Shown: positions 4,352 to 57,698 of the stretch, one piece after another
Numbering within the stretch: position 1 is the first letter of the stretch
How the letters are laid out: each line of letters begins with the position of its first letter
Source of the DNA: Octopus bimaculoides
Lineage: Eukaryota
Direction: 5' to 3'
Length of the DNA: 63,985 nucleotides
Assembly: GCF_001194135.2 (NCBI RefSeq)
Contig: NC_068983.1
Coordinates: forward strand, 35,496,928 to 35,560,912
Translations under genes and position numbers: made by a program
The notes under the pieces: model-generated
What the model saw: the letters and a program-made list of their open reading frames with translations, nothing else
Databases searched by the model: none
Told to the model about the DNA's origin: nothing

Positions 4352-5590
4352 AACATTCCATCTTTTGTGTTGAGAGTCAAAATGAGTGACATGGACCAGC
4401 TGAGGAAAAAGGACAATGAATGAATGAGATGTGTTACCAAAGACAATACATTCTTGCCTGACAATTTTATCCAGAAAGGAGTGAGGATGAAGGTGATGTA
4501 CTACTATTTTTTATTAAAATAAAGAGAGTTCATGCATGCCCTTAGAAGGCCTGGTTAATGTGTATTCCACCAACTGGGGCAAAGCATAGAGAAGCATGTG
4601 TCCAGCCTTTAAGACTGAGAATCAGGAAAGAAGAGATAGAGCAGGTGCATCATGTACCTGGTCTCATCATACATGGATCTCAGGGATCATAGCCAGAGAT
4701 ATAGGGTTTGATGTTGACTTTTGGCTCATCATCATATTGGTACATTACAAAAATGTGGCGAGTATGGATTACCAATACTTTGTATCAATCTCCAGATACT
4801 GATGACTATAAGGCTATACTTTATAGTGGGAATGGGTCAGTACAGAAGAGGAAAAGCAAAAGGAAAAAGAAGTGGCAGAGATAATAGCAATAAAAATAGC
4901 AGATCCCAGAATTAAAGATTACAGCTGTTGCTATTTTGTTTCCAGAGTACTGCCTGTCATCTTGGCAACCTAAAGAAAGTCATATCCAACTTGAATTTCA
5001 ATAAAGCAGAATGGAAATCAATCCACAAATTTAATGTCCATCTTCCATGCCAGTCATCATCATCATCATCATCATTTAACGTCCGTTTTCCATGTTGGCA
5101 TGGGTTGGATGGTTTGACCGAAAGCTGGTAAGCCATGGAGCTGCAGCAGGTTCCAATCTGATTTGGCATGGTTTCTATAGCTGGATGCCCTACCTAATGC
5201 CAACCACTCCAAAAGCACTCACATCAGAACACACTAGCTTAACTGGTCAAAACTTCAAAGTCACTGTCAACAATATTCTTGTTAAAGAATGAAAAATTTG
5301 TACTCTACAAAAGTATAAAGTAACCATCAGATTAATGTAAAATTGTTTTTATTATAACTGAGCATAAAAACACACACACCCATGCAAATATAAAACGAAC
5401 AAAAATATTTCATTAAACAATCTTTTTATTTACTCCTATTTTTATATATCACAGTTATGAAAACATCACAAAATCAAATTTATTAAAAGGAAAAAGAAAC
5501 TTAACCAACTCCTCAGCCAGATCATTAAAATCACAATTTTTTTCATGTTAATCAGTTTCTGTAAAATGTGCTGAAATAAGCTGACATCCA

Positions 5591-5686
5591 TTAACTTTTA
5601 CCAGGTCCAGGTTTCTCTTTCTTGTATTTTTCTAATTCTACTTTGATTTTTTCATACAAATCCATTGGCCCAGGAATTTTTGGTAA
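5591..5686 (-). CDS. STMP1: STMP1-like microprotein, exon 3 (LPKIPGPMDLYEKIKVELEKYKKEKPGPGKS*)
   Basis: Acceptor ttttttttttacacttAG; only the phase-0 frame is open. TAA at 5593-5591; AATAAA on the - strand at 5484-5479 and 5430-5425. Confidence 0.8.
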   Translation of the reverse strand, partial: LPKIPGPMDLYEKIKVELEKYKKEKPGPGKS

Positions 5687-6529
5687 CTAAGTGTAAAAAA
5701 AAAAGGCATCAATGATGAAATAATTGAATCTTAAAGACACTACACACACATATATACCATCATCATCATTTTTTAACATCCAGTTTTCCATACCAGCATG
5801 AGTTGGATGGAGTTTACTGAAGCAGATTTTCTACAGCCGGTGCTCTACCTGTTGCCAACCCTCACCATCTACAAGCAAGGTAATGCCCAGACATGTTTTT
5901 GCAGAATATCATCATTGTTCAACATCCTCTTTCCATGCTGGCATGGGTTGGATGGTTTGTCAGGAGCTGGCCAGACAGAAGCCTGCACCAGACTTCTGTC
6001 TGTTTTGGCAGGGGTTTTACAGATGGATGCCCTTCTTAACACCAACCACTCAACAGAGTGGACTGAGTATGCCTGGAATTTTGGAGAGATGGTGGGAAAA
6101 TGCTAAGCATACTTACATGGGACGGGGATCAGAATATAAATGGGATGGTCGAATAAAAGAAGAGAGTGAAGGTGGCAAATGCTAGGGTATACCCTTGGGG
6201 TACGGAGGTCATAATATAAGTGATACAGTATTGCTAAAGGAGCATCAGCAGTGTGTGGGGGAGGAGAATGTAGTGATTGGTGAAAATTTGGGTATGTGGA
6301 GGTGGAGAGCTACTGGATAGCAATGATAGAGTGAACAGGGTCATGAGGACAGGATTGGGGAGTGAGAGATAAGCATAGTGCACGAAGGAGGAGATGTGAA
6401 GAAGAGATGTAATTTGGTTTGTTGGGGTAGGGTGTGTGAAAAGTTTTCTTATGTGTGGGTGGAACACAGTGATTCTAGAACTCAGTTTCATTGACGTAGG
6501 TGGGTCTTCTCAAGAACTTCGTTTTGCCA

Positions 6530-6745
6530 GACATCTCAATCTATTATCATTTCTTGTGTGAGGTCCAACATCCTTACCACTTCGTCCCAGGTCTTCTTGG
6601 GTCTCCTTCTTCCATGGGTACCCTCCACTTTCAGTGACTGGCACTTCTTTATGCAGCTGTCTTCATTCATATGCATCACATGTCCAAACCAATGTAGTCT
6701 TCTCACTCGCATGCTACATTTGATTCCTCTTATGCCACACACACA
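6530..6745 (-). mobile_element. RTE-clade LINE ORF C-terminal fragment
   Basis: RRLHWFGHVMHMNEDSCIKKC...GRRRPKKTWDEVV matches the larger copy at 14763-15185. Confidence 0.85.
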
Positions 6746-7400
6746 TACAATAGGCTTCTTTCAGTTTCCATCTACCAAATCCACTGTCTAGTCACTAGCT
6801 GGCCTGGGGCTACAGTAGATGCTTACACAAAGTATCCAAAACCATGTGGATGGGAAGCAAAATACTTAACTACAGTCATGCCTGTGCCAATATATATATA
6901 TAGTTTTATCGTTTAAGGCAAACACTTGTATGCTCAGGGTTCTGCTGTAACCTGTTTCCTAATGCAAAAGTTGCAGTCTCATTAGGCAATGAAATAGTTC
7001 TGTAAGAGTTTTGGCCCCTTCCACTGCAACACAGAGCTGCCCAGGACCACCCATTGATGTAACAAAAACTCCTATATAAAAAGCATCCAGTCCACACTCT
7101 AAAGTGGTTGGTTTTGGAAGGCTATTCCCACTTTAAAAACCATGCCAAAGCAGACAGTGGAGATAGGTGCAGTACTCTGGCTTGCCAGCTCCTATCAAAC
7201 CATTTAACCCATGCCAGCAGGGAAGACACACATTAAATGATGATCATATACATGTGTGTGTGTGTGTATAAATCCAACAATTTATACAAAACACATGGGT
7301 TCACAAAATAATCTAATACATATTAACATCAGGTAAAAGAAATATTAATTACATATTGCTAAATAACCATATGCAAAAAGGAAGAAATCTGAATACGTAC

Positions 7401-7454
7401 AGAATAATATTGGTCAGCATAGGCCCCCACATAAAATCCAACCGCAAAACTAAC
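7401..7454 (-). CDS. STMP1: STMP1-like microprotein, exon 2 (VSFAVGFYVGAYADQYYS), 54 nt
   Basis: Acceptor ttatattatccAG and donor GTACGT, phase 0/0. The GxYxxQxY transmembrane motif matches the STMP1/C7orf73 family. Confidence 0.8.
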
Positions 7455-7594
7455 CTGGATAATATAACATAAAAATAAAATGAATTTATATGTTAAAACA
7501 CAAGACAAGAAACATACATTTATACATTTTAACCCTTTTGATACCAACCAGCTTGAAACCACCTCTGCTGCTCTGACACAAAATCACTTATTTA

Positions 7595-7950
7595 TTACCT
7601 CTGCCTTAGTGCAGGCAGAGGTATTGTTTTCAGTTGCGTTTGTTTGTTTGTCTGTGGACAAGATATCTCAAGAACCGTTGAATGGATTCGGATGAAACTT
7701 TCAGGGATGTTTGGCCTCATGACTGGCACAAACTGATTATATTTTGGGATCAATCTGGTACCAGACAAGGATTCTGGATTATTTTTCCTGTTTCTTTAAT
7801 TGTTGAGAGCGATCAGGTTCATTTTTAGTATCCTCATTTGTGAGAACAGACAAGTTTATTTCAGATATTCTCATTTTAAAAATTATCTCTGGCTAATCAT
7901 TGAGAGGATGCTGGTGTTGCCTTGATGGAGGTTTGTGCTCTCTAAGTACT
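7595..7950 (+). mobile_element. Helentron/HINE-type non-autonomous element
   Basis: 5' ATTACCTCTGCC...GGCAGAGGT hairpin, internal GTTT/GTCT microsatellite and 3' CCTTGATGGAGGTTTGTGCTCT. A related copy is at 58885-59170. Confidence 0.6.
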
Positions 7951-8340
7951 CTTGTTTACATTAAAACTTTTCTAAATAATTTTCATCATCATCTAACATG
8001 GTTTACACACTGGTATAGGTTGGATGGTTTGACGGGCTGACCAAGCTCCATTTATCAGTTTTGGTATGGTTTCTATCACTGGATGCTCTTTCTAATTGCC
8101 AACCACTTTACAGAGTGTGTTGGGTGCTTCTTATGTAGCACCAACACTTATCATGGACATGCTGAAGCACTGCCTTGGAGGGTTTAGTCAATTAAATCGA
8201 CCTCAGTACTTATTTTTAAGTCAGGTACTTATTCTATTGGCCTCTTTTGCTGAACTGCTAAGTTAGTGGGACACAAACAAACCAATACCAATAGTCAGGC
8301 ATTAGGGCAGAGTAGACAAGCACAACAGAACTATATACAT

Positions 8341-8915
8341 GGCAATGATGTGGTGAGAATGAATGAGGATAGCTGCGTGAAAAAGTGCCACTCCCTAACA
8401 GTTGAGGGAACCCGTGGAAGAGGTAGGCCCAGGAAGACCTTCGAACATTGGGCCTCACCGAGGCGATGACTACTGACCGAGACCTTTGGAAATGTGCTGT
8501 GCGTGAGAAGACCAGGCAAGCCAAGTGAGATCGTTGCCAGGGCCCCTGGACTGGCTCTTGTGCAGGTGGCACATAAGATGTACCATCCTGAGCGTGACAG
8601 TTGCCAGTACCGCCTGACTGGCCTTCGTAGGGTTTTCGAGTGAGATCGTTGCCAGTGCCCCTGGACTGGCTCTTGTGCAGATGGCACATAAAAGACACCA
8701 TTTCGAGCGTGGCCGTTTTCGTGCGGGTGACACGTAAAAGCACCCAATACACTCTCTGAGTGGTTGGCGTTAGGAAGGGCATCCAGCTGTAGAAACTCTG
8801 CCAAATTAGATTGGAGCCTGGTGTAGCCATCCGGTTGCACCAGTCCTCAGTCAAATCGTCCAACCCATGCTAGCATGGAAAGTGGACGTTAAACGATGAT
8901 GATGATGATGATGAT
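8341..8915 (+). mobile_element. RTE LINE 3' end (ORF tail, 3' UTR and (GAT)n tail)
   Basis: VRMNEDSCVKKCHSLTVEGTRGRGRP followed by the shared 3' UTR and gatgatgat. Confidence 0.85.
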
Positions 8916-10144
8916 ACACACACACACAGAGGCAATGACAAATGACCAAGACTCTTGGCAATAAGTCATGCTTGAGAAGACCCATCAAGCCAAGTGAAAT
9001 TGTGGTAATGGCAGAAACTGGTGTCATACAATTGGCACTTGTGCTAGTGGCATGTAAAAGCACCCATTACACTCTTGGAGTGGTTGGCATTAAGAAGAGT
9101 ATCCAGCTGTAGAAACCATGCCAAATCAGACTGGAGTCTGGTGCAGCCCCTCAGCTTGCCAACCCTGGTCAAACCATCCAAGCCATGCCAGCACGGACAA
9201 CGGATGTTAAATGATGATGATGATAGACATACAGACATATATATATCATCATTATTTAATATCCACTTACCCATGCTCATAAGATATTGGGACTCATATA
9301 CAACTGTCACACAATGTCAAAAAAGGCCCAAAACACTCATTACGTGTATACATATATATGCATGTATTATATATCATCATCATCGTTTAACGGCCTCTTT
9401 CCATGCTGGCATGGGTTGGACAGTTTGACTGAGGGCTGGCGAGCCAGAAGGTTGCACCAGTCTCAAATATGATCTGGCAAAGCTTCTACAGCTGGATGCC
9501 TTTCCTAACGCCAACCACTCCGAGAGTGTAGTGGGTGCTTTTACGTGCCACCCCAGCACGAGGGCCAGTCAAGCGGTACTGGCATCAGCCACGCTCAAAT
9601 GGTGCTTTTTTATGTGCAACCTGCACGGGGAGCCAGTCCAGCGGCATATATTAGAAGACACTTGCCCAAGGTGCTATGCAGCAGGACTGAACCCAGGACT
9701 ATGTGATTGAGAAGCAAACTTCTTACCACACAAACACGCCTGTGCGTGTGTGTGTGTGTATACACACATACAATACGTATACAAATATTACAGTAGCAGG
9801 CAGAGGAAAGGCATTTTGGGAAGGAAAGGTCAAAAGAGAAGAAACCTTTAGAAAGACAGATCCAAATTCGAAGCATTTCATAGTGATTTTTGTTTTATAA
9901 CAATGCTTTACAATATCCACCTTTTGTTCACATTAAGGCCTTCATGAACAAGCCTCCCTCCTCCTCTACCATTGCACATCTCTTTTACTATCTCTTCTAT
10001 CACCTTTACGCTCTAGTTAATCTTTCAGCACTGTTCTGCTGTTGAACGAACGGAGATAACGCTGGGTAAAGAGTACTCTACGTTGTTGGCAGCTAAATCG
10101 TTACATATTTTTTTAGCAACCATCTGCTTGTAGAAGCGCGCGCG

Positions 10145-10154
<10 letters not shown>

Positions 10155-10212
<58 letters not shown>
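10155..10212. repeat. (TA)n(GA)n microsatellite
   Basis: Direct reading. Confidence 0.95.
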
Positions 10213-10213
<1 letters not shown>

Positions 10214-10798
10214 ATCTAAAGACATGTTGCTTCTGTTTGTTTTAAGTTTTTTTTTTTTCCCCTCAAAATATTATTTTCGTTTTAATCCGACACGAAAATA
10301 AGAATTAACCATATTTTCCTAAAATTATACAATATAAAAGGAAATATTTTTGTAAATACTATGTACATGAACATCTCAAGAAAGCCTTTGTTATTTACTG
10401 TAGAAGCAAACACAAAATTTTAAGAAGCACATGTCCTTTTCGCAGTGTATAATAAGTATTTTACAAAGTATAAACAAATCAAATTATTTTCTTATTTCCG
10501 TTTCGGTTTTTCATTTGACTTCAGAACGACCAGAGCAAAAAAAAGTAAACCAGAACATATAGTCGGTTGGAAACTGTAACCAACGGCGGTGTTGTTACAG
10601 ATCACACTATAAACAAAACAAATAGCCATAAACATTTTCAAGATCTGTAAGATCTATTTTAATATCACTAACTTTGTTTTAAAAAAAAAGACAAATGCAC
10701 TGATTCAATTATACACTTTCTTTCCTTCTGACATCAAGCTCGTTACAATGACAAGTCAAGCGACAAACTATGAAACAGCGTAGTAAAAAGAAATTATA

Positions 10799-10950
10799 TA
10801 CCGTATTAAAGCGTGTATAAGAAACCCCCTAATTTTGGGGGCTTAATATTTGGAAAGAAGATTTTGCAAGGGATTATAATACTATCCATGTATAAGAAAC
10901 CTGATTTTTGACAAAAAAAAAAAAGGTTCTTTATACACGTTAAAATACAG
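10799..10950. mobile_element. Short Tc1/mariner-type MITE
   Basis: Imperfect TIRs TACCGTATT..CGTGTATAA and TTATACACG..AATACAG. Confidence 0.5.
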
Positions 10951-11611
10951 AATATAAACAATGGTTATAGCACTAAAAGTAGCACATAACTAACGGCTTA
11001 ACAGATGTATACCCCATCCACCCTCATCATGCAGTGACGGCATAACTAGGGATATACATATGTAGTTATGCCTAAATGGCAAATAACTATATTAGAAAGT
11101 TAAGAAAATGTCTTACCAACTTGCCCAACATGATCCACGATGTTAATTAATTAATTGTTTTAAGACAACGAATCCAACATTGATTACCGTTCTAAGATGC
11201 ACATCGATATTTGTATCTCCTGTAATTAGAGATCGCACGCACATCGATATTTATCTCCCGTTTCACACGTTCAACAAGATTACACTCGGCTATCTAGGAA
11301 GAATCCACTATATAATGTCTCGGATCTTTTTTAAATCGGGGGCCACATTTTTCATTAATGTTTTACGTAGTGTTTTTGGTACCGAAAGACTTTCAAACTT
11401 CGTATACTTATCTATTTTGTGTTATAGAACAGAAAAATACTTTTGTATTCGAATTTATTTCATGTAAAAAATTGTCTTATTTCGATAATTTCAACCATTC
11501 ACTGACAAGTATTCAGTTGTTTACATTTACTCCTTTGGCTCATTAAGCGATGTAAAGCGTATTTAATCTCCATACCTTCGTTTTATTTGCTTTTTTCATT
11601 TTAAATTTGCT

Positions 11612-11645
11612 TTAACCCTAACCCTAAGGTTAGGGTTAGGGTTAA
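11612..11645. repeat. Perfect 16-bp inverted telomere-type repeat TTAACCCTAACCCTAA-GG-TTAGGGTTAGGGTTAA
   Basis: Direct reading. Confidence 0.9.
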
Positions 11646-11693
11646 TTGTTTCAGAATCGTTTGTTTATGTAGTCGGCACTTAATGTATATCGG

Positions 11694-12619
11694 NNNNNNN
11701 NNNNNNNNNNNNNNNNNNNNNNNNNNNNNNNNNNNNNNNNNNNNNNNNNNNNNNNNNNNNNNNNNNNNNNNNNNNNNNNNNNNNNNNNNNNNNNNNNNNN
11801 NNNNNNNNNNNNNNNNNNNNNNNNNNNNNNNNNNNNNNNNNNNNNNNNNNNNNNNNNNNNNNNNNNNNNNNNNNNNNNNNNNNNNNNNNNNNNNNNNNNN
11901 NNNNNNNNNNNNNNNNNNNNNNNNNNNNNNNNNNNNNNNNNNNNNNNNNNNNNNNNNNNNNNNNNNNNNNNNNNNNNNNNNNNNNNNNNNNNNNNNNNNN
12001 NNNNNNNNNNNNNNNNNNNNNNNNNNNNNNNNNNNNNNNNNNNNNNNNNNNNNNNNNNNNNNNNNNNNNNNNNNNNNNNNNNNNNNNNNNNNNNNNNNNN
12101 NNNNNNNNNNNNNNNNNNNNNNNNNNNNNNNNNNNNNNNNNNNNNNNNNNNNNNNNNNNNNNNNNNNNNNNNNNNNNNNNNNNNNNNNNNNNNNNNNNNN
12201 NNNNNNNNNNNNNNNNNNNNNNNNNNNNNNNNNNNNNNNNNNNNNNNNNNNNNNNNNNNNNNNNNNNNNNNNNNNNNNNNNNNNNNNNNNNNNNNNNNNN
12301 NNNNNNNNNNNNNNNNNNNNNNNNNNNNNNNNNNNNNNNNNNNNNNNNNNNNNNNNNNNNNNNNNNNNNNNNNNNNNNNNNNNNNNNNNNNNNNNNNNNN
12401 NNNNNNNNNNNNNNNNNNNNNNNNNNNNNNNNNNNNNNNNNNNNNNNNNNNNNNNNNNNNNNNNNNNNNNNNNNNNNNNNNNNNNNNNNNNNNNNNNNNN
12501 NNNNNNNNNNNNNNNNNNNNNNNNNNNNNNNNNNNNNNNNNNNNNNNNNNNNNNNNNNNNNNNNNNNNNNNNNNNNNNNNNNNNNNNNNNNNNNNNNNNN
12601 NNNNNNNNNNNNNNNNNNN
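11694..12619. other. Assembly gap (N)
   Basis: Run of N. Confidence 1.
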
Positions 12620-12710
12620 GGGGCGGAAGTCTTGCCCCGAATAGAATTCTTCACTAACAAACTCTGTGTCGTTCAAAATCACAAAAATGTAAATCTCTCG
12701 TCTGACGTAC

Positions 12711-12731
12711 GTTTTTGTATAAATAATTCAT
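12711..12731 (-). CDS. STMP1: STMP1-like microprotein, probable exon 1 coding part (MNYLYKN)
   Basis: gggaaaATG (A at -3), seven codons, then donor GTACGT at phase 0, in a CpG-retaining region. This is the best candidate but is not proven. Confidence 0.55.
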
Positions 12732-12934
12732 TTTCCCGAGGGAAGCAATAAAACGCCGAAGTGTAACTCCAGACAAGACGCATTAAGCCATAAATGAAAT
12801 ACATGGAAAACACACATTTGTGTATATTATTACTTTAGTATTTCGAGTCAATAGGGAGATTCTATGTGGTCGTTTGACCTGCTAAGAATAACAGCCGAAT
12901 TCCCTCAAATCAGACCCAACTAGCTTTACACAAT

Positions 12935-14080
12935 CATCATCATCGTTTAACGTCCGCTTTCCATGCTAGCATGGGTTGGACGATTTGACTGAGGACTGGT
13001 GCAACCGGATGGCTACACCAGGCTCCAATCTAATTTGGCAGAGTTTCTACAGCTGGATGCCCTTCCTAACGCCAACTACTCAGAGAGTGTAGTGGGTGCT
13101 TTTACGTGTCACCCGCACGAAAACGGCCACACTCGAAATGGTGTCTTTTATGTGCCACCCGCACAAGAGCCAGTTCAGGGGCACTGGCAACGATCCCGCT
13201 CGAAAATCCTACAAGGCCAGTCAGGCGGTACTGGCAACGGTCACGCTCAGGATNNNNNNNNNNNNNNNNNNNNNNNNNNNNNNNNNNNNNNNNNNNNNNN
13301 NNNNNNNNNNNNNNNNNNNNNNNNNNNNNNNNNNNNNNNNNNNNNNNNNNNNNNNNNNNNNNNNNNNNNNNNNNNNNNNNNNNNNNNNNNNNNNNNNNNN
13401 NNNNNNNNNNNNNNNNNNNNNNNNNNNNNNNNNNNNNNNNNNNNNNNNNNNNNNNNNNNNNNNNNNNNNNNNNNNNNNNNNNNNNNNNNNNNNNNNNNNN
13501 NNNNNNNNNNNNNNNNNNNNNNNNNNNNNNNNNNNNNNNNNNNNNNNNNNNNNNNNNNNNNNNNNNNNNNNNNNNNNNNNNNNNNNNNNNNNNNNNNNNN
13601 NNNNNNNNNNNNNNNNNNNNNNNNNNNNNNNNNNNNNNNNNNNNNNNNNNNNNNNNNNNNNNNNNNNNNNNNNNNNNNNNNNNNNNNNNNNNNNNNNNNN
13701 NNNNNNNNNNNNNNNNNNNNNNNNNNNNNNNNNNNNNNNNNNNNNNNNNNNNNNNNNNNNNNNNNNNNNNNNNNNNNNNNNNNNNNNNNNNNNNNNNNNN
13801 NNNNNNNNNNNNNNNNNNNNNNNNNNNNNNNNNNNNNNNNNNNNNNNNNNNNNGCAGTTACAGCCCATGTTTCACTGCCATGTAGCATGGCTGTTCGTAC
13901 ACATGCGTCATACAGTCTGCCTTTTACTCTGAGCGAGAGTCCCTTTGTCGCCAGCAGAGGTAAGAGCTCTCTAAACTTGGCCCAGGCTATTCTTATTCTA
14001 GCAGTTACACTTTCAGCGCACCCACCCCCACTACTAACTTGGTCACCCAGATAGCGGAAGCTATCGACTACCTCTAGTTT
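12935..14080 (-). mobile_element. 5'-truncated RTE LINE copy spanning a gap
   Basis: FRYLGDQVSSGGGC...HGSETWAVT at 14080-13854; 3' UTR and (GAT)n tail at 13253-12935. Confidence 0.85.
13254..13853. other. Assembly gap (N)
   Basis: Run of N. Confidence 1.
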
Positions 14081-14214
14081 TTCTCCCTGGATAAACAAAA
14101 TAGGTAGAAACCTTGCATGTCTCTCCTCCCATTTATGACCTTAAGAAAGTAAGATATAGCAGTACTCAGCATTTGAAACCCTGTCAGTTCAGTAATGGGC
14201 AAAGGCCACAGCAT

Positions 14215-16320
14215 ATCATCATCATCATCATCGCTTAACGTCCACTTTCCATGCTGGTATGAGTTGGGCGATTTGACCAAGGACTGGCGAACCAGATGGC
14301 TCCACCAGGCTCCAATCTGATCTGGCAGGGTTTCTACAGCTGGATGCCCTTCCTAATGCCAACCACTCTGAGAGTAAAGTGGGTGCTTTTATGCGCCACT
14401 GGCAAAAGGGCCAGTCAGACAGTACTGGCAACAGCCACACTCAAATGTTGCTCTTTACGTGCCACCTGCACAGGAGCCAGTACAGAGGCACTGGCAACAA
14501 CCTCGCTCGAATATTTTTCATGTGCCACTGGCACAAGTTCTAGTAAGGCAACACTGGTAACGATCATGCTCAAATGGTGCTTTTTACGTGCCACCAGCAC
14601 GGAAGCCAGTCAGCTGCTCTGGCAGCAATCACGCTCGGATGGTGCTATTAGCACTCCACTAGCACAGATGCCAGTCATGCAGTGCTGTCATCGAATTTGA
14701 TTTCGATTTCACTTGCCTCAACAGGTCTTCGCAAGCAGAGTTTAGTGGCCACGGTTATGGTCTCACTTTGTTTGCTGGGTTTTTTCAAGCACAGCATATT
14801 TCCAAAGGTCTCGGTCACTAGTCATTGCTTCGATGAGGTCTAATGTTCGAAGGTCACACTTCACCACCTCATCCCAGGTCTTCCAGGGTCTACCTCTTCC
14901 ACAGGTTCCCTCAACCGCTAGGGTGTAGCACTTTTTCACACAGCTGTCCTCATTCATTCGCAACACATGACCATACCAGTGCAATCGTCTCTCTTGCACA
15001 CCACATCTGATGCTTCTTAGGTCTAACTTTTCTCTCAAGGTACTTATACTCTGTCGAGTATGCACACTGTCAGTACACATCCATTGGAGCATACTGGCTT
15101 CATTCCTTGCAAGCTTACACATGTCCTCAGCAGTCACGGCCCATGTTTCACTGCCATGTTGCATGGCTGTTCGTACACGTGTCATACAGTCTACCTTTTA
15201 CTCTGAGCAAGAGGCCTTTGTCACCAGCAGAGGTAAGAGCTCTCAGAACTTTGCCCAGGCTTTCTTATTCTAGCAGTTACACTTTCAGAGCACCCATCCC
15301 CGCTACTGACTTGGTCACCTTGGTAATGGAAGCTATCAACTACTATTGCTGCACTTCTTATGTGTCCATAGCTTACACTGGGTACATCTTATAGAGTTTC
15401 TACCAACGCCTTTTCTACAAATCGAGCAGGCCCATCTACCTGAAGGGATTTGTGGTTTGTCTGCCTTCCTACTTATTAGGACTTTGGTTTTAGCTAGGTT
15501 GACTCTAAGACCCTTCGATTCTAGTCCTTGCTTCCACACCTGAAACTTCTCTAGTTCTGATAATGACTCAGCAATTATAGCAAGGTTATTAGCATAGAGG
15601 AGCTCCCAGGGGCATTCTGTCTTGAATTCCTCTGTTATTGCTTGGAGGACTTTGATAAATAGGAGGGGGCTGAGGACTGAACCTTGGTGGACCCCTACCT
15701 CTACTCGGAATTCTTCACTGTACTTGTTGCCGACACTCACCTTACTGACAGCGTCCCTGTACATGGCTTGCACAGCTCTCACTAACCATTCATCTATCCC
15801 TAGTTTCCTCATTGACCACCAAATAAGGGATCGGGGGACCCTGTTGAAGGCTTTCTCCATGTCAACGAAAGCCAGGTACAGAGGTTTATCTTTGGCTAGA
15901 TATTTCTCCTGCAGCTGTCTTACCAGAAATATAGCATCACTGGTGCTTTTCCCTGGCACAAACCCAAACTGCATCTCATCTAAACTGACTCTCTCCCTAA
16001 TTAGTTGGGCTGTGACCTTCAATACCTGATCCAACAACTTGATACTTCTGTAATTATTTGTATCTAAAGCGTCACCTTTACCTTTGTAGCAGTTGACTAT
16101 GGTGCTGCTACACCAGNNNNNNNNNNAAGCGTCACCTTTACCTTTGTAGCAGTTGACTATGGTGCTGCTACACCAGTCATTGGGTATGACTCCTTCGTGT
16201 ATCACCTGGTTAACTATATGAGTGACTAGGTGATAACCAACATCACCAGATATTTTGAGCATCTCTGCAGTGATTCCTGATAGGCCAGGGGCTTTCCCTG
16301 TCTTCATACTCTTAATTGCT
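14215..16320 (-). mobile_element. RTE-clade LINE, 5'-truncated and defective (RT domain, PHD-like Zn finger, C-terminus, 3' UTR)
   Basis: RT motifs KAPG, NYRSIKLL, QFGF, AFVDMEKAF and GVHQGSVLSPLLF; catalytic YADD reads YANN. CSIC..C..C..W.H..C finger; (GAT)n tail near 14215-14231. Confidence 0.92.
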
Positions 16321-17438
16321 TTATCTACAAAGGTACTGTCAATATCAAGTTTCCATATTTGATGTGTCCTTATCAGATTTTGGCTCATATTTCAGCCAAT
16401 TGTTGTTCAGGTACATTTATGTGGTGTCAAGATTAAGGGAAAATTCCACACAGTTTGTCCCAAATAATGGTTATAAATCAAAATGCACAGGAAATACAAA
16501 GCAGAGGATTCATAGAGGTTTTCTTGGTTAGCTGGTAGCTAATCCACCCTGTCCTCATGTTAAAAAGATCACCTCTTGCCAAGCACAAACAACATTTTCA
16601 ACTCTCGGCAAGCATACATTCTTACTAGCTACTAGTATTCAACATAACAGCTTTTTGTAAAGTAAACTTAAAACACCAATCTGTTATTAAACATGTTAAT
16701 AAAATTTAAATATTATGACTAGGAGCAGATCCCAGCAAAACAACCATAGAGCTTTTTGTAAAGCCAGATCTACTAGAGACCTATGTGACTCACCAGTAAG
16801 CTCTCAACCTCAAAAAATTTGGTAGAAGTATTGTTTTTGCTCTGACACCAGGAAAGCTTTTGCCTGCATCTGATAGGAATCTCCAGTCAAAACTATTAGC
16901 CTATGGGTGCCATCTGTCTCTCATTTGTCTTGAATCAGCAATTTCCTAAGACTACCCTATTGCTGATGGAGTTATGGTGCATATTCTATCAACTCTGGTT
17001 TGCATCAGAGTTCAGTTTTGTTTCTTACATTCTTCCTCCTGTACATCAACAATTTACTTGCTATCACCTCAAACAATGCCCATTCTTACGCAGATGATAC
17101 TATCCTTCATTCCTTTCTAACTTTCCAACCTACACTTCATCCACGTACAACCTAGATAACTCACACCATATCTACACACACTGAATCCATGGATAGAAAT
17201 CTAGGAAAAACATCTTCCAATGAGATTATGTCAAACTTCACCCATTTCAGCAGCAAAAAACAAAAATCAAGGCATGTACCAAGAAAATGTTACTGCATCC
17301 CTCCCCTAAAATGAGTGACATAGAATTAGAGCCCTTACAATCTCCTTATCACTGAGAATCTGTAGGGTGGTGGATTAGCAAGACTGTGTCAAAAAAAGTG
17401 CTTTGTTCCAGCTCCTTATATTCTGAGTTGTAATCCTG

Positions 17439-18728
17439 TTGAGGTCAAATTTGTCTTTCATCCTTTCAGTGGATAAAGTTTTAGAGGAGAAAAAGAGCTT
17501 TGCGAAAATAACAGAAGTTAAAACATGTGAAGTGGACCTAACGAAAATGTTGGATTATCAGAAAATGGCAACAAAAGTGGGTGAAGAAGTAAAGCTGTCG
17601 CCACCACAGAAAATAATGGAAAGAATGGAAAAGAGAACGATTACGTATAAAGTAATCGCAGCAGAAAAAAATAAAGTGGAACTCATGGAAATTGAAACAA
17701 TAGAAAAGGCATTAAGAATTGTAACGAAAGATGTAATATTCCTTTCACGAGGCAATAAATTCGGAACAATAGTAGCACAGTTCAAGTCGGAAGAGGTAGC
17801 AAGGAGGATGGCCATAAAAACGGTGAAGACAGATAAAGTAGTTCTTCTACCCATGTATCTTGGAAGGACATCCAGGGTCAGGGTAGAAAGAATACCACCT
17901 GATATGGAAGTAGCTTGGGTGGCGGTGGCTGTACTCCTTGGAAGTGAGGGAAAGGTGTCTGTTATCCAAGCCACGTCAACTGAAGACGGGACGTGGAAGG
18001 GGAAATCATTGGAGATGAACATTCAAAGTGAGAGAGAAACACTAGAAAAACTGGCAGAGATAATAACGATAGGTAACATAAGTCTGAGAGTGTGGGTGGA
18101 GGGCAGAATCCCTCGCTGTTATAAATGTGGCCTGAAGGGTCACATTAGAGCGAGTTGCCCTCCACCAAGCAAAGAAACTGAAGAAAGGCATACACAGGAG
18201 TTACTACAAGACAAACAACAGGAAAAAAACAGAGAATACAGAAGAGACAATACCGGCGGAAGAAGAAAATGAAGAAAGGAAGAATGTAGGCTTCTCACAT
18301 GCAGAATCCCGACCCACCCAATGTCCATCCACACCCTCTTCGTCCCACCCTCCCCCTGCAGACACTTTACCTACCCATTCCTCACCAACACGAAAACAAA
18401 AAAGGACACCACACACAATGTTTTAGAAACTTCCCCTCTCACTGATTGTTATGCATGTTTGGTTTATTTTGAGGCAGAGAAAGAACTGCATGAGATAGTG
18501 GAGAAATGGGAAGATACAGTCTATGTGGACGTTAACGACGACGAGTATGGAGAAATTACAGTGATGTTGATAACAGAAAAACATTTGAACAAAATTTTAA
18601 AATTCCATGATTTTGACGTATAGAAGGTTAATTATAATATGGACAAATTGCCGAAAGAAATAGGATACGAACAAGTAAAAACACGATATGGTATAGATAT
18701 TATGGAGAACAGGCGAAAAGGCAAATAA
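17439..18728 (+). mobile_element. Gag/ORF1-like element of L1/Tx1 type with a CCHC zinc knuckle, frameshifted; no ORF2 seen
   Basis: 277-aa ORF with CYKCGLKGHIRASC. An acidic then P/S-rich continuation lies in another frame (EEENEERK...PSTPSSSHPPP), followed by a hairpin and a T-rich tail. Confidence 0.7.
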
Positions 18729-18929
18729 GTGATGTTACTTGATGGGGCAGGTAACATCATTTCCATTTCTCATTTTTTTTCATTCTTACATATTACCATT
18801 CGTTATTTTAGTTTTTCTTCTGATTTCATCTTTTTGTATTTCTATTTCCCTGAGTTTGTGTTTGTCGCGTTTGTATTGTCTTTATGTGTTATAATGTTCG
18901 AGGGAAGATTCTTTGTTTCGCCTTTTATT

Positions 18930-19125
18930 TGTTGTTGTTGGCACTCCGTCGCTTACGACGACGAGGGTTCCAGTTGATCCGATCAACGGAATAGCCTGCT
19001 CGTGAAATTAACGTGCAAGTGGCTGAGCACTCCACAGACACGTGTACCCTTAACGTAGTTCTCGGGGATATTCAGCATGACACAGTGTGACAAGGCTGGC
19101 CCTTTGAATTACAGGCACAACAGAA
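18930..19125 (-). mobile_element. 3' part of a (CAA)n-tailed SINE
   Basis: Near-identical to 53125-53330. Confidence 0.85.
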
Positions 19126-19281
19126 ATCAATATCTATAAAACACAAGATGTTTGTGTGTGTGTGTGTGTGTGTGTACGTGAATGTGGGTTATGCACGTCC
19201 ACAAATTAGCACGCATGTCGCTCCAATTTTAAGAGGACATTGTTCATGACCCTAGCTGTGTTTTTGTCAACTTTTTCTCAC

Positions 19282-20030
19282 NNNNNNNNNNNNNNNNNNN
19301 NNNNNNNNNNNNNNNNNNNNNNNNNNNNNNNNNNNNNNNNNNNNNNNNNNNNNNNNNNNNNNNNNNNNNNNNNNNNNNNNNNNNNNNNNNNNNNNNNNNN
19401 NNNNNNNNNNNNNNNNNNNNNNNNNNNNNNNNNNNNNNNNNNNNNNNNNNNNNNNNNNNNNNNNNNNNNNNNNNNNNNNNNNNNNNNNNNNNNNNNNNNN
19501 NNNNNNNNNNNNNNNNNNNNNNNNNNNNNNNNNNNNNNNNNNNNNNNNNNNNNNNNNNNNNNNNNNNNNNNNNNNNNNNNNNNNNNNNNNNNNNNNNNNN
19601 NNNNNNNNNNNNNNNNNNNNNNNNNNNNNNNNNNNNNNNNNNNNNNNNNNNNNNNNNNNNNNNNNNNNNNNNNNNNNNNNNNNNNNNNNNNNNNNNNNNN
19701 NNNNNNNNNNNNNNNNNNNNNNNNNNNNNNNNNNNNNNNNNNNNNNNNNNNNNNNNNNNNNNNNNNNNNNNNNNNNNNNNNNNNNNNNNNNNNNNNNNNN
19801 NNNNNNNNNNNNNNNNNNNNNNNNNNNNNNNNNNNNNNNNNNNNNNNNNNNNNNNNNNNNNNNNNNNNNNNNNNNNNNNNNNNNNNNNNNNNNNNNNNNN
19901 NNNNNNNNNNNNNNNNNNNNNNNNNNNNNNNNNNNNNNNNNNNNNNNNNNNNNNNNNNNNNNNNNNNNNNNNNNNNNNNNNNNNNNNNNNNNNNNNNNNN
20001 NNNNNNNNNNNNNNNNNNNNNNNNNNNNNN
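19282..20030. other. Assembly gap (N)
   Basis: Run of N. Confidence 1.
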
Positions 20031-20386
20031 GATTTCCACTAGGGTGTTACGGTTAGGATTAGGATTAGTGTGTGTGTGTGTGTGTGTGCGTGCACGCGCA
20101 CGCGCGAAGCCAAACTAACAAGGAAGGAAGACGTCGATCAGCACTGGTTCAATACTAAAATCATTCACGATCTTTTAATTTATTTTTATGTCTTTCCCCC
20201 CTTAAAAACAATATAATAGGCTAAAAGTAAATACCTTTTTTTTTAAATTTTCACGGTTAAATATTTTGTTTCTTCACTCCGTTTTCGATGTTTCTGCGTT
20301 TTTATCTTCCTTTGCTGTTAATAAAGATGACACATTTGTTAAGGAGTCTCATTTAAGAGAAACTTCAACCATATATTATTAGACGA

Positions 20387-20830
20387 TTAAACACAGGTCA
20401 TTCGTTTAAATATTATGTGAAACATACTTTTTGGTTTGAAAGTGGCCCATTCCTTGTGTAGAGCAGTTGTGACAATGGATTGGAATGTAGGAAATAATAT
20501 CTGGTTGATTATATAACCATCAGGATCTTCGGGATATTCTTGTATATGAAGAGTCTTCATAGCTTCTACATACTGTTTCTGTGTGATGAAACCCTTTCTG
20601 GTCGGATCCATGATATGAAACAGAGATTCTATGTTACCTTTATCAAAAAGACTTACTGGCTTCTTTGGATTATTTTTCAATTCTTGAAGGTACTCAACCA
20701 TAAATTTCTTTGGTTCTGCAGGTCTAAAAAACACTAAAGAAGCTAACATTTTGTTAAATAGCGACTGAATTTTATGTTCCTTTAAATATTGATCTGCTAA
20801 CATCTCACGGGTCTCTTTATTTTCCTCCAT
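20387..20830 (-). CDS. EFCAB10: EF-hand calcium-binding domain protein 10 (RIIa/DPY30-like dimerisation N-terminus plus EF-hand)
   Basis: ADQYLKEHKI...LVFFRPAEPKKFMVEYL...NIESLFHIMDPTRKGFITQKQYVEAMKTL parallels vertebrate EFCAB10 (AAEYLEKHQI...LLFFRPEKPKEYL...NIVAMFEMMD..GRGTISFVQYKEALKTL). The last 13 codons could be intronic (GTATGT donor at 20427-20422). Confidence 0.9.
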   Translation of the reverse strand: MEENKETREMLADQYLKEHKIQSLFNKMLASLVFFRPAEPKKFMVEYLQELKNNPKKPVSLFDKGNIESLFHIMDPTRKGFITQKQYVEAMKTLHIQEYPEDPDGYIINQILFPTFQSIVTTALHKEWATFKPKSMFHIIFKRMTCV

Positions 20831-22544: not shown

Positions 22545-22933
22545 GGACTATATGTAATCTGAACCTTTTCTCCCCTTATTTATTAATTTTTTTTACGGAA
22601 TCCCACGTTTTAGGCTATGGAGATTCCGATTCTGAAAAAAAATTGTTTGAAATATTTCAAACCAACCCCCACCACCACCACCACCAAGCAGGCTATTTAC
22701 ATGCTAGAAATAACAGTCAAATCTCACAAAACTAGTGTTAGGGTTAGGTTTAGGGTCAGGGTTACGGTTAGGGTTAGGGTTGGATCTATATAAAAACCGG
22801 GTGGGGGGATCGAAATTTTGAAATTGAGATGTTTGAAAAAAAATTTTCAGAATCGGAATCTCCATAGTCTAAAACGTGAGATTCCGTAAAAAATAAATAA
22901 TAAGGGGGGAAAGGTTCAGATTACATATAGTCC
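22545..22933. mobile_element. MITE with ~95-bp TIRs and internal degenerate (TTAGGG)n
   Basis: GGACTATATGTAATCTGAACC... (22545-22645) is the reverse complement of 22842-22933; TTAGGG-like repeats at 22738-22780. Confidence 0.8.
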
Positions 22934-31058: not shown

Positions 31059-31896
31059 GTAAAGTAGCCATATTTAACCGATCTAAAATTCCTCTAGTCT
31101 TTATCTCCACCATTCGTTACTTGCTACTATCAGCTATTTTTATATACTTCTGTTTTCTTCCGTAACTACCTGGTTACTTTACCTGTATATTTCTTCTCTT
31201 TGTGCTTCACCTGTTTCTCTTTTCCTCTCTCTAAGTTAGCAACTGGTTTTTTCCACTCACCCTTGCTACTGTATTTCCTAGCAAGCAAGTCAAATTTTTC
31301 AGACCAAACTTTACTACCAAAAATGTGAAGTCAGTTTATACACCAAGACAGCTTTGGCAGACTGGAAATTCCACGAGGACTGCAACAGAATTTGGAAAGA
31401 TAGTGATGCCTGAATGTTTTCACTACATGTTTACACTTTATCTACATTGGCATATATGCTGAAAAATGCAGTATTTGATTGTATACCTTTCTATATCTGC
31501 TCTTCCTCTCTCTTTTCACTTCACCCATCTCCATAATTCTTGTAACCTTCTTATCTCAAACTCATCCTCTGGTAGTCTCCATGTTTCTCATTGGTATTCT
31601 TTCTACTCTTCATACTTTACCAATTTCTGTTTCCCTCTAGTACTCTGCTTGTCTTCATAGCTCACTCCACCATCTGCCTATCTCAATGTTTCCTACTTAT
31701 ATACCAATCCTCTCTTCTGCAGTTATACTCTTTCCTCTCAACCACAGCTGTACTCTCTCCATTCAACTGCAATTGTACTCTCTCCTCTCCACTACAACTG
31801 TACTCTCTTCATCAAAACTGTACTTTCCTTTCTATTACAACAATAGTCCCCCCACCCCAATCCTATTCACTGAAGACTTTTCGCTATTTTGTTCAG

Positions 31897-31965
31897 GACA
31901 AGAAATTTGGTGCCGCTGGTGAGACTGTCATTATTGAAGAATTACTTGAAGGAGAAGAAGTGTCT
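31897..31965 (+). CDS. GART: GART exon 6 (DKKFGAAGETVIIEELLEGEEVS)
   Basis: AG/GT, phase 0/0. Confidence 0.95.
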
Positions 31966-33639
31966 GTAAGTCAACAATTTATTAATGTTCTGTGAATTTC
32001 GTATGAAGTTCAGTAATTAGGTGGCAAGTAATGCTGTTCAATGGGTTTCAAACCCCACAGAGGACATTGTTGTGATTTATATCTGTCTAAATGACAAAGA
32101 TACCCATATACACATGCACACAGTTATTCTAAACATAATATTGATTTCAAACTTTGGCACAAGGCCAGCAATTTGAGGGGAGGGGCTAAGTCTATTGAAT
32201 CAACCCTAGTGCTCAACTGGTACTTATTTTATTGACCCCCAAAGGATGAAAGGCAAAGTTGACCTCTGAAGAAAGACAGATGAAATGCCACTAGGCATTT
32301 TGTCCAGCATGATGACAATTCTGCCAGCTCAATGCCTTAATCCTAAACATAATATTGTTAAATGTTTCAAATAAACTAATGATTATAGCATGTCCTCTAG
32401 GATTTGACCCTATTCAGGAAGAGATCCTCTATGTGGTCACCCTTATCTGCTTGAAATATTTGTCATAATTCATGTCTCACCCTTTCTTAAAATAAGATGA
32501 ATGCCTTTGGTAATGATGATGATGTAGTTTGAGACGCTAATAGAAGATGAGATAGTGATTTCTGGTACAGAAGGGACCTTGGGCTAAATTGCAACGTTAT
32601 CATTGTCATTTTAATGTTCACTTTAGCATACCTGCATGGGTCAGATGAATTTTATTGAGGCAGTTTTCTGTGATTGGGTGTCCTTCCTGTTGCCAATCCT
32701 CACCTGTTTCCATGCAAGGTAATATTTTCCCATGGTCAGACATATTTTTCATGAAAGACTGGAAACAAACAACCTCACTTGGATATGATGGTAATGCTCA
32801 TTTACAACTATCACATGATATCAAAACAAGGGTATACACACACACAGCAGCCTTCTTTCAGTTTCCTTCTACCATATCCACCAACAACACTTTGGTCAGC
32901 ATGGGTCTACAGTAGAAGACACCTGTCCAAAGTGTCACACAGTGGGACTGAACTCAAGGTCACTTGGTTGGGAAGCAAACTCCTTAACCACATGGCCATG
33001 CTTGTGCCAACCCCAATTATTCACAGTACCCAGTCACGGGTTTAATGTTTTAAAAGACATTCAGCACTTAAGTTTTTGTTTCTTTACTCTCTAAAAGTGT
33101 CTTAAATTTGTAGAACTAGACAACCCACAATGAAATATTTCTTCATAAATACCAATCCTGTCTTTACTTTGCATGTGGTATCTGTTTAGGTGTCATCTAT
33201 CTATCGGTGTATGTATGCACATGCAAGGGTGTAGGTATTTGTGCTTCTTTGTCTCAACATCACATGATAGTTGTAAATGGACACCACTATCAAACAACCA
33301 GTGTCCTTCGTTTGCAAAACTTGCCTGGCCATGGAGAAATATTACCTTCCTTGAAAATATGTCTAAGTTGGTGACAAGAAGGGTATCTGAACATACAAAA
33401 TCTTCCTCGACAATCTGATCCACTTGTAAGAACGAACTTGTAGTGAATTGTCCTCTCGTAATTCCACCAGACACAGAGCATCAACTTGTATTCAAAATGG
33501 TCTTGTTTGGTGACAAGGTTTCAGAAGCTGGCCCTTGCTTAACCATTGCTTCTGCCCCTGAGATTGCAGAAAAATATCTCCCTCAGATTATTACGTGTTC
33601 TGATCCCTGACTCTCTTCTTGTGCTTGCGATGCTTCATC

Positions 33640-57495: not shown

Positions 57496-57698
57496 GGGAA
57501 GAGTTATTGTGTCCAACTAAGATTTATGTGAGATCTGTTTTACCTCTCATGAGACAAAATCTTGTTAAAGCGTTTGCACATATTACTGGTGGAGGCCTCG
57601 TTGAAAACATTCCAAGAGTTCTCCCTAGAGATTTAGCTGTTCAACTTGATGCTATGACCTGGAATGTTCCTCCAATTTTTGGGTGGCTTCAAATGAAA
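57496..57698 (+). CDS. GART: GART exon 15 (LLCPTKIY...AHITGGGLVENIPRVLP...WLQMK)
   Basis: AG/GT, phase 1/0. Confidence 0.97.

What the first reader, a model, noticed from the sequence alone, without database searches (positions are those of the whole stretch)
5591..12731. Unlisted 56-aa STMP1-like mitochondrial microprotein gene spread over 7.1 kb
Seen: three tiny - strand exons (21, 54 and 96 nt) with canonical splice sites give MNYLYKN-VSFAVGFYVGAYADQYYS-LPKIPGPMDLYEKIKVELEKYKKEKPGPGKS*, with AATAAA signals 110-165 nt past the stop. Known (recalled): human STMP1/C7orf73 is a 47-aa, three-exon inner-membrane peptide with G.Y.AQ.Y..P followed by a basic tail. Inference: an orthologue with the same exon layout, below the ORF-track cutoff and easily missed by annotation. 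A GCGGAAGT ETS/GABP-like site lies at 12622-12629.
Basis: partly seen in the sequence, partly recalled or inferred. Interest (0 to 1): 0.75.

Follow-up and report, generated by a model that had tools for sequence, protein, structure and literature searches.

The report
Unannotated STMP1 microprotein gene, first exon revised

Summary
Exons 2 (7401-7454) and 3 (5591-5686) on the - strand are real and far beyond chance. A family profile built without this window ranks them as the two best of 3,314 six-frame fragments. They are also the two best blastn matches in the window to cuttlefish (Sepia esculenta) mRNA contigs encoding a 67%-identical protein. Both introns sit at the same phase-0 positions as in the fish and acorn-worm STMP1 genes (coding exons 15/54/72 and 15/54/102 nt). 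Differences from Sepia show purifying selection (pN 0.19, pS 0.79).

It lies on a 634-bp island between two assembly gaps, adds nothing to the Pfam score, and ranks last of 164 possible first mini-exons.

A 15-nt exon at 11117-11131 (MLGKL|GTAAGA) ranks first and has the conserved length. It lies on the same contig as exon 2, directly downstream of the window's strongest CpG peak, and lifts the Pfam DUF4535 score over threshold. The favoured product is 54 aa, and the gene then avoids the gap.

No transcript from this species was available, so exon 1 stays inferred (about 0.7). This is a new member of a known family; interest is low.

The parts
5591..5686 (-). Coding exon 3 (96 nt including the TAA stop at 5591-5593): LPKIPGPMDLYEKIKVELEKYKKEKPGPGKS*
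   Evidence: Acceptor tttttttttacacttag|. Second-best six-frame fragment of the window against the family HMM. Best blastn match in the window to Sepia mRNA, 74% over 88 nt, E 2e-7.
5425..5484 (-). Two AATAAA poly(A) signals (5479-5484 and 5425-5430), 107 and 161 nt past the stop; a third lies at 5348-5353
   Evidence: Consensus match only; usage was not tested.
5687..7400 (-). Intron 2 (1,714 nt, phase 0), containing interspersed repeats
   Evidence: GT at 7400-7399, AG at 5688-5687. Repeat copies at 5750-6068 and 7072-7257. Homologous intron position in fish and Saccoglossus.
7401..7454 (-). Coding exon 2 (54 nt, phase 0 on both sides): VSFAVGFYVGAYADQYYS, the membrane-helix core with the GxxxG, Y, Q and Y residues
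   Evidence: Best six-frame fragment of the window against the family HMM, E 4e-4 of 3,314. 72% nt identity to Sepia mRNA, ending at the exon borders. Exactly 54 nt, as in fish and acorn worm.
7455..11116 (-). Intron 1 in the revised model (3,662 nt, phase 0), with no N run inside it
   Evidence: Donor GTAAGA at 11116-11111, acceptor at 7456-7455, N runs listed. Repeats at 7613-10205.
11117..11131 (-). Favoured coding exon 1 (15 nt): ATG TTG GGC AAG TTG = MLGKL, with A at -3 and an in-frame TAA at 11149-11147
   Evidence: Rank 1 of 164 candidate first mini-exons by family HMM, with or without Sepia in the model. Raises Pfam DUF4535 to 29.2 bits against a cut-off of 28.3. Same 15-nt length as fish and Saccoglossus exon 1. 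Inferred; no transcript evidence.
11132..11693 (-). Putative 5'UTR and promoter: unique, CpG-undepleted sequence with a 13-bp direct repeat AATATCGATGTGC at 11199-11211 and 11239-11251
   Evidence: The 300-bp window 11201-11500 has CpG o/e 1.82, the highest in the window (window mean 0.36). The repeat occurs twice against 0.01 expected. No other copy of this region in the window. The promoter role is inferred.
11694..12619 (.).
12711..12731 (-).
   Evidence: Adds 0 bits to the Pfam score. Rank 165 of 165, below 'no exon 1'. Lies on a 634-bp island between two gaps.
12623..12630 (+). GCGGAAGT ETS/GABP-like octamer at the gap edge
   Evidence: Single copy; 0.26 expected; 24 of 100 shuffles have at least one. 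Not significant.

Best explanation

The favoured coding exons are 11131-11117, 7454-7401 and 5686-5591 (15/54/96 nt, both introns phase 0). The product is the 54-aa protein MLGKLVSFAVGFYVGAYADQYYSLPKIPGPMDLYEKIKVELEKYKKEKPGPGKS.

The first ~20 residues form one hydrophobic helix carrying the family's invariant G-x3-G-x-Y-x2-Q-x-Y-x2-P signature. The GxxxG within it is a helix-packing motif. The rest is a Lys/Glu-rich, partly amphipathic tail ending in a Pro/Gly-rich tip.

By inference from vertebrate STMP1, the peptide inserts into the inner mitochondrial membrane through its N-terminal helix. There it associates with respiratory-chain complexes, tuning complex IV activity and, downstream, DRP1-dependent fission.

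Shown here: the sequence, family membership, the conserved exon layout, conservation under purifying selection, and transcription of the orthologue in Sepia.
Inferred: which first exon is used, expression in this species, localisation and biochemical role.

Confidence that this is a genuine STMP1-family gene with exons 2 and 3 as given is about 0.93. Confidence that 11117-11131 is the coding first exon is about 0.7. The figure given below is for the whole statement.
For: Family membership:
- A family HMM built without the window or Sepia scores exons 2+3 at 41.8 bits and the 54-aa model at 48.8 bits.
- In a six-frame scan of 3,314 fragments, exon 2 (E 4e-4) and exon 3 (E 0.01) are the top two, colinear on one strand; the next best scores 5 bits.
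- All six invariant columns of an 18-sequence family alignment (G, G, Y, Q, Y, P) are present.

Gene structure:
- Etheostoma STMP1 has coding exons of 15/54/72 nt and Saccoglossus STMP1-like has 15/54/102 nt. All introns are phase 0 and lie at the same alignment columns as here.

Cephalopod orthologue:
- An exhaustive profile search found P0209/P0250, 36/54 residues identical to the 54-aa model and sharing its 3-residue insertion.
- It is encoded without introns on RNA-seq contigs from three runs. One run, SRR19578112, is Sepia esculenta (PMC10141105).
- These mRNAs' best two blastn matches in the 64-kb window are exons 3 and 2, ending at the exon borders.

Selection:
- pN 0.19 against pS 0.79; differences by codon position are 13/9/30.

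First exon at 11117-11131:
- Rank 1 of 164 by family HMM, GTAAGA donor, in-frame stop 18 nt upstream, same contig as exon 2.
- It lies next to the window's highest CpG o/e peak and a duplicated 13-mer.

Function of vertebrate STMP1: PMC11837024, PMC12455275 and PMC9932084.
Against: - No transcript, junction read or peptide from the window's own species could be consulted.
- Neither the 54-aa nor the 56-aa product is in the 15-billion-protein collection.
- The peptide evidence for exon 1 is only moderate. Over the whole window and both strands, 4 of 1,604 mini-exons reach MLGKL's HMM score. That is about 0.3 expected by chance in the 13 kb upstream of exon 2, before counting donor quality and position.
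- The Pfam gain is only 1.5 bits.
- Sepia mRNA has an upstream in-frame ATG (MSDVMFSRL), so first-exon coding length may not be fixed at 15 nt in cephalopods.
- A first exon hidden in the 926-N gap cannot be excluded.
- Localisation and function are extrapolated from vertebrates at about 33% identity.
Confidence: 0.7

Rival explanations
1. The first coding exon is 12711-12731 (MNYLYKN) across the assembly gap, giving a 56-aa STMP1 orthologue spread over 7.1 kb.
For: ATG in an AAAATG context, a gtacgt donor identical to that of exon 2, and CpG-undepleted surroundings (o/e 1.3-1.44 at 12501-12900). The orientation of the island in the scaffold agrees with the gene.
Against: Adds 0 bits to the Pfam score (27.7 with or without it). 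Scores last of 165 options, below the mean of random mini-exons (40.9 against 42.85 bits). It is 21 nt where fish and acorn worm have 15. It lowers N-terminal hydrophobicity. It sits on a 634-bp island between two gaps, half of it a repeat. Its donor ranks only 10th of 164.
Confidence: 0.1
2. Exons 2 and 3 are right, but the true first exon is neither candidate. It lies in the unread 926-N gap or is another mini-exon upstream.
For: 164 phase-0 ATG...GT mini-exons exist upstream. Scores as high as MLGKL's occur by chance at about 0.3 per 13 kb. The CpG-undepleted domain runs into both edges of the gap.
Against: MLGKL combines the top family score, the conserved 15-nt length, a consensus donor, an upstream in-frame stop and the position beside the CpG peak. 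No other candidate combines these.
Confidence: 0.14
3. The locus is a decaying or silent copy (a pseudogene), and the functional gene lies elsewhere in the genome.
For: There is no expression evidence for this species, and the product is absent from protein collections.
Against: The introns are retained at ancestral positions, so it is not a processed copy. The frame, stop and all four exon 2/3 splice sites are intact. Substitutions against Sepia are concentrated at third codon positions, with pN/pS about 0.24. All invariant family residues are kept.
Confidence: 0.05
4. The match is a chance juxtaposition of short ORFs with splice-like dinucleotides; there is no gene.
For: The exons are tiny and were chosen by eye; a vertebrate-only HMM scores each exon at noise level.
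Against: Exons 2 and 3 are the top two of 3,314 fragments with a broad family HMM and the top two blastn matches to Sepia mRNA. Both intron positions match two distant species exactly.
Confidence: 0.01

Closest known systems
Vertebrate STMP1 (C7orf73; mouse 1810058I24Rik/Mm47; zebrafish stmp1), Pfam PF15054 DUF4535
   Same: Both have a single N-terminal hydrophobic helix with G-x3-G-x-Y-x2-Q-x-Y-x2-P followed by a Lys/Glu-rich tail with a Pro-rich end. Both have three coding exons with phase-0 introns at identical positions, a 54-nt middle exon and (in the favoured model) a 15-nt first exon.
   Different: Identity to human is only 33%. The tail is longer (96-nt against 72-nt last exon) with a 3-residue insertion (PGPMDLY region). 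It has DQYY where vertebrates have AQNY. It scores only just above the Pfam threshold. The vertebrate functions (complex IV, DRP1 fission, NLRP3) have not been tested in any mollusc.
Sepia esculenta STMP1-like transcript product (P0209/P0250; Logan contigs from SRR19578112, SRR8281664, SRR29271485)
   Same: Closest relative found: 36/54 residues identical, with the same 3-residue insertion and the same ...NPGP/KPGP tail. The mRNA is contiguous across both positions where this window has introns.
   Different: Sepia has an extra upstream in-frame ATG (MSDV-MFSRL...) and a two-residue longer C-terminus. Synonymous sites are saturated (pS 0.79), so the two species are deeply diverged. UTRs show no nucleotide similarity.
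Saccoglossus kowalevskii 'short transmembrane mitochondrial protein 1-like' (XP_077864576.1, P0223)
   Same: An annotated invertebrate member with the same 15/54/~100-nt exon plan and multi-kb introns; the gene spans 10.4 kb for 56 aa.
   Different: It is a deuterostome, has AQNYEVPNI like vertebrates, and lacks the 3-residue insertion.
Other inner-membrane mitochondrial microproteins (mitoregulin/MTLN, BRAWNIN/UQCC6, MOCCI)
   Same: Same general kind: a nuclear-encoded single-pass peptide under 100 aa acting on respiratory complexes (PMC12455275).
   Different: They are unrelated in sequence. The only Pfam match of the window peptide is DUF4535.

Membership tests
STMP1 / Pfam PF15054 (DUF4535) | Match to the family profile at or above Pfam's gathering score (28.3 bits) | tested here: met
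29.2 bits, E 7.5e-7 for the 54-aa model with exon 11117-11131. An independent family HMM gives 41.8-48.8 bits.
STMP1 / Pfam PF15054 (DUF4535) | Invariant signature G-x3-G-x-Y-x2-Q-x-Y-x2-P | tested here: met
   G, G, Y, Q, Y and P are the only invariant columns in an 18-sequence alignment spanning vertebrates, acorn worm, slime mould and unnamed metagenomic or RNA-seq members; all are present.
STMP1 / Pfam PF15054 (DUF4535) | Peptide of about 43-60 aa with one N-terminal hydrophobic segment and a charged, Lys-rich C-terminal tail | tested here: met
   54 aa. Best 15-residue mean hydropathy is 1.49, starting at residue 1 (human 1.63, Sepia 1.55). 9 K+R and 6 D+E, all after residue 18 except K4. 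This is a hydropathy calculation only, not a membrane-topology predictor.
STMP1 / Pfam PF15054 (DUF4535) | Three coding exons, phase-0 introns at conserved positions, 54-nt middle exon, 15-nt first exon | tested here: met
   Fish 15/54/72 and Saccoglossus 15/54/102; window 15/54/96 in the favoured model. The middle exon and both intron positions are met whichever first exon is used. The 15-nt first exon is met only by 11117-11131.
STMP1 / Pfam PF15054 (DUF4535) | Transcribed, spliced and translated | not testable with these tools
   No reads from the window's species were available. The Sepia orthologue is present as spliced mRNA in three RNA-seq runs.
STMP1 / Pfam PF15054 (DUF4535) | Localisation in the inner mitochondrial membrane; effect on complex IV and fission | not testable with these tools
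   Known for human and mouse only (PMC11837024, PMC9932084).
STMP1 / Pfam PF15054 (DUF4535) | One-to-one orthology (single copy, conserved neighbours) | tested here: inconclusive
   There is only one DUF4535-like locus in the window. The neighbours differ from fish: EFCAB10-like and GART here, a dynamin-family gene in Etheostoma. The rest of the genome could not be searched.

The most novel reading that the evidence does not exclude
The gene has two alternative first exons, 11117-11131 (MLGKL) and 12711-12731 (MNYLYKN). Both lie within one CpG-undepleted domain that spans the gap. They would give isoforms whose N-terminal membrane helix differs in hydrophobicity and perhaps in membrane targeting. 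The proximal promoter would be driven by a duplicated ATCGAT-core (DRE-like) 13-mer, serving as a cephalopod housekeeping or mitochondrial-gene promoter element.
Probability: 0.07. Interest if true: 0.3.

Novelty: new member of a known kind. Interest (0 to 1): 0.2.

Why it matters
It adds a missing cephalopod member to a microprotein family already reported as conserved 'from human to nematode' (PMC9932084). It is also a concrete example of what gene annotation misses: a 165-nt coding sequence split into 15/54/96-nt exons across 5.5 kb. The practical value lies in genome annotation and in comparative work on mitochondrial microproteins. The case also shows that a 5-codon first exon cannot be chosen by splice-site appearance alone; conserved exon length and a family profile gave a different answer from the eye. 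It does not open a new biological question.

Tried and rejected
- Word-index homologue search with the 56-aa peptide found nothing, even though a 67%-identical Sepia protein is in the collection. That negative result was therefore not informative.
I used vertebrate sequences plus the two exon translations as separate alignment rows instead.
- A vertebrate-only HMM is too narrow: each exon scores about 4 bits, at noise level. I replaced it with a broad family HMM.
- The third homologue search, with a mixed alignment, was swamped by vertebrates in the 120 rows shown and revealed no named mollusc member. Including vertebrates in that query was a mistake.
- Exact look-ups found nothing for the 56-aa and 54-aa models and fragments, nor for two window ORFs meant to identify the organism and its annotation. 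The species of the window remains undetermined. 'Cephalopod' is inferred from the closest relative being Sepia.
- blastn of the Sepia 5'UTR against the window found no similarity, so exon 1 could not be located by nucleotide homology.
- A literature search for the family in molluscs was badly framed and returned nothing useful.
- An Rfam scan of the whole window found no RNA family.
- I considered and rejected three readings: a processed pseudogene (the introns are present), a chance ORF, and the ETS site as promoter evidence.
- Structure prediction was not run. The tool does not accept the spliced peptide, and a single helix would not discriminate between the models.

Full report
**What is in the sequence**

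On the - strand, 12731-12711, 7454-7401 and 5686-5591 read ATGAATTATTTATACAAAAAC|gtacgt, ccag|GTTAGT...TATTCT|gtacgt and cacttag|TTACCA...AGTTAA. AATAAA lies 107, 161 and 238 nt past the stop. With 0.26 copies expected by chance and 24 of 100 shuffles holding at least one, it carries no weight.

**The gap, tested first**

The window has N runs at 11694-12619, 13254-13853, 16117-16126 and 19282-20030.

The distal half of that island (12933-13253) is a high-copy interspersed repeat, 96% identical to 8585-8906 within the gene's own intron. Only scaffolding connects that exon to exons 2 and 3. Everything from 5300 to 11693 is one uninterrupted contig.

**Exons 2 and 3 are real and belong to the STMP1 family**

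- The spliced peptide hits Pfam PF15054 (DUF4535) at 27.7 bits, E 2.2e-6. That is just under the 28.3-bit gathering score, with residues 8-48 covering profile positions 3-44 of 45.
- BLASTP against human STMP1, recalled from memory, gives 33% identity. The recalled sequence was confirmed when it retrieved 241 proteins named 'short transmembrane mitochondrial protein 1'.
- An exhaustive profile search of 1.84 billion representatives returned diverse non-vertebrate members.
- From 18 such sequences, excluding the window and its closest relative, I built a family HMM. I then scanned all 3,314 stop-to-stop six-frame fragments of the window.
- The two best fragments are the one containing exon 2 (E 4e-4, HMM positions 6-24) and exon 3 (E 0.01, HMM positions 24-47). 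They are colinear on one strand, 1.7 kb apart, and the next best fragment scores 5 bits.
- In an 18-sequence alignment the only invariant columns are G, G, Y, Q, Y and P (G-x3-G-x-Y-x2-Q-x-Y-x2-P). The window peptide has all six.

**A transcribed cephalopod orthologue**

- The profile search found P0209/P0250: (MSDV)MFSRLVSFALGIYAGIYLDQYYSLPKIVGPMDLYDKIKDEMEKHRKNNPGPSKDDS.
- It is encoded without interruption on assembled RNA-seq contigs from three runs. One of them, SRR19578112, is a Sepia esculenta transcriptome (PMC10141105).
- It shares the window peptide's 3-residue insertion relative to other members.
- By blastn, these mRNAs' two best matches anywhere in the 64-kb window are exon 3 (5683-5597, 74%, E 2e-7) and exon 2 (7455-7402, 72%). 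The matches stop at the exon borders, and the matched segments are adjacent in the mRNA. This supports the exon 2-exon 3 junction.
- Against Sepia, pN is 0.19 and pS is 0.79 (saturated). Differences by codon position are 13, 9 and 30 of 54. That is the pattern of a protein under purifying selection.

**The exon plan is ancient**

I mapped two annotated genes onto their genomic DNA. Etheostoma STMP1 has coding exons of 15, 54 and 72 nt. Saccoglossus STMP1-like has 15, 54 and 102 nt spread over 10.4 kb. Both introns are phase 0 and fall at exactly the alignment columns where the window has its introns. The middle exon is 54 nt in all three species.

**Exon 1**

On the - strand between exon 2 and the next gene upstream (7455-20386) there are 164 phase-0 ATG...GT mini-exons of 1-14 codons.

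I joined each of the 164 candidates to exons 2+3 and scored the result against the family HMM:

| First exon | Score (bits) | Rank |
|---|---|---|
| 11131-11117, MLGKL\|gtaaga | 48.8 | 1 (with or without Sepia in the model) |
| none | 41.8 | 118 |
| 12731-12711, MNYLYKN (reader) | 40.9 | 165 (last) |

Pfam agrees.

Further points in favour of MLGKL:
- It is 15 nt, the conserved length.
- It resembles Sepia MFSRL and vertebrate MLQFL.
- It has A at -3 and an in-frame TAA 18 nt upstream.
- It is on the same contig as exon 2.

It also lies immediately downstream of 11201-11500. That interval has the highest CpG observed/expected ratio of any 300-bp window (1.82, against 0.36 for the whole window). 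The stretch is unique within the window. It holds a 13-bp direct repeat, AATATCGATGTGC, at 11199-11211 and 11239-11251, with 0.01 copies expected by chance.

The caveat is an empirical null. Over the whole window and both strands, 4 of 1,604 mini-exons reach 48.8 bits. That is roughly 0.3 expected by chance in 13 kb, before requiring a consensus donor and the promoter-like position. Sepia also has an upstream in-frame ATG. I therefore treat 11117-11131 as favoured (about 0.7), not proven.

**Resulting model**

The coding sequence is 11131-11117 + 7454-7401 + 5686-5591 = 165 nt. It encodes MLGKLVSFAVGFYVGAYADQYYSLPKIPGPMDLYEKIKVELEKYKKEKPGPGKS (54 aa). The introns are 3,662 and 1,714 nt, and no assembly gap lies inside the gene.

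**How it probably works**

The anatomy has three parts:
- an N-terminal hydrophobic helix with a GxxxG packing motif and conserved Tyr/Gln;
- a Pro hinge;
- a Lys/Glu-rich tail.

In vertebrates STMP1 fractionates with the inner mitochondrial membrane and associates with UQCRC2. It enhances complex IV activity, promotes DRP1-dependent fission and is needed for NLRP3 activation (PMC11837024, PMC12455275, PMC9932084). For this locus those steps are inferred. The immune and cancer phenotypes are vertebrate-specific read-outs. The conserved core role is more likely the respiratory-chain association.

**Known or new**

The family is reported as conserved 'from human to nematode' (PMC9932084). NCBI already names an acorn-worm member. 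Members also turned up in a slime mould. So a cephalopod orthologue is expected. What is new is only that this copy appears unannotated: neither model is in the 15-billion-protein collection. I could not inspect the genome's own annotation or identify the species.

**Verdict**

This is a genuine, ordinary STMP1 orthologue. The first exon, product length and gene span should be revised. It is a new member of a known kind, of low interest.

Noticed in passing
window 11612-11645: A perfect 34-bp palindrome of telomere-type repeats, TTAACCCTAACCCTAA-GG-TTAGGGTTAGGGTTAA, lies about 50 bp from the gap edge and about 480 bp upstream of the favoured ATG. Another (TTAGGG)2 is at 22768-22779.
   Followed up: partly
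window 11199-11211 and 11239-11251 (- strand): The 13-bp direct repeat AATATCGATGTGC contains the only two TATCGAT (Drosophila DRE-like) cores in the window, 68-120 bp upstream of the favoured start codon. It may be a promoter element; this was not tested in other cephalopod promoters.
   Followed up: partly
window 8585-8906, 12933-13253, 60551-60923, 63744-63985 and more than 15 further copies: A high-copy interspersed repeat of about 150-370 bp occurs in both orientations, and some copies are 96-97% identical. The edge of the gap at 13254 falls inside a copy, which probably explains why the assembly broke there.
   Followed up: partly
window 16117-16126 and flanks: The 10-N gap is flanked by the same ~50 nt on both sides (the last 40 nt before it recur from 16137). 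This duplicates WCSSTIVNCYKGKGDA in a LINE reverse-transcriptase ORF. It looks like an unmerged-overlap assembly artefact.
   Followed up: yes
window 20390-20830 (- strand): An uninterrupted 147-aa ORF carries an EFCAB10 C-terminal EF-hand domain (Pfam PF24548, E 2e-14). It is the next gene upstream on the same strand. Its exact product is not in the gene-position collection.
   Followed up: partly
window about 31.6-57.8 kb (+ strand): Exons of the trifunctional purine-synthesis gene GART are present: a GARS ATP-grasp piece at 31591-31992 and an AIR synthase C-terminal piece at 57354-57755.
   Followed up: no
window 14.7-18.3 kb: Retroelement debris: a reverse-transcriptase ORF at 15339-16388 (-), its continuation at 14766-15185 (-), and a zinc-knuckle gag-like ORF at 17439-18269 (+).
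   Followed up: no
L003 1-1685 (Logan contig, SRR19578112): The Sepia contig joins an unrelated long ORF (it looks like argininosuccinate synthase, judged by eye and not checked) to the STMP1-like mRNA through an A-run at about 1396-1415. L004 and L005 show a different 5'UTR up to the same A-run, so L003 is an assembly chimera and not a bicistronic mRNA.
   Followed up: yes
P0234, P0217: DUF4535-like proteins are recorded in the slime mould Heterostelium album and, as a tandemly duplicated 105-aa product, in a Brassica cretica assembly. The family may be older than animals. The Brassica record could be contamination or misannotation.
   Followed up: no
L007-L009 (Tara Oceans metagenome contigs, PRJEB4352): The relative that shares the 3-residue insertion (P0251) is encoded without introns, immediately upstream of a RecQ-type helicase gene, on 3-kb marine contigs from an unidentified eukaryote with a compact genome.
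   Followed up: no
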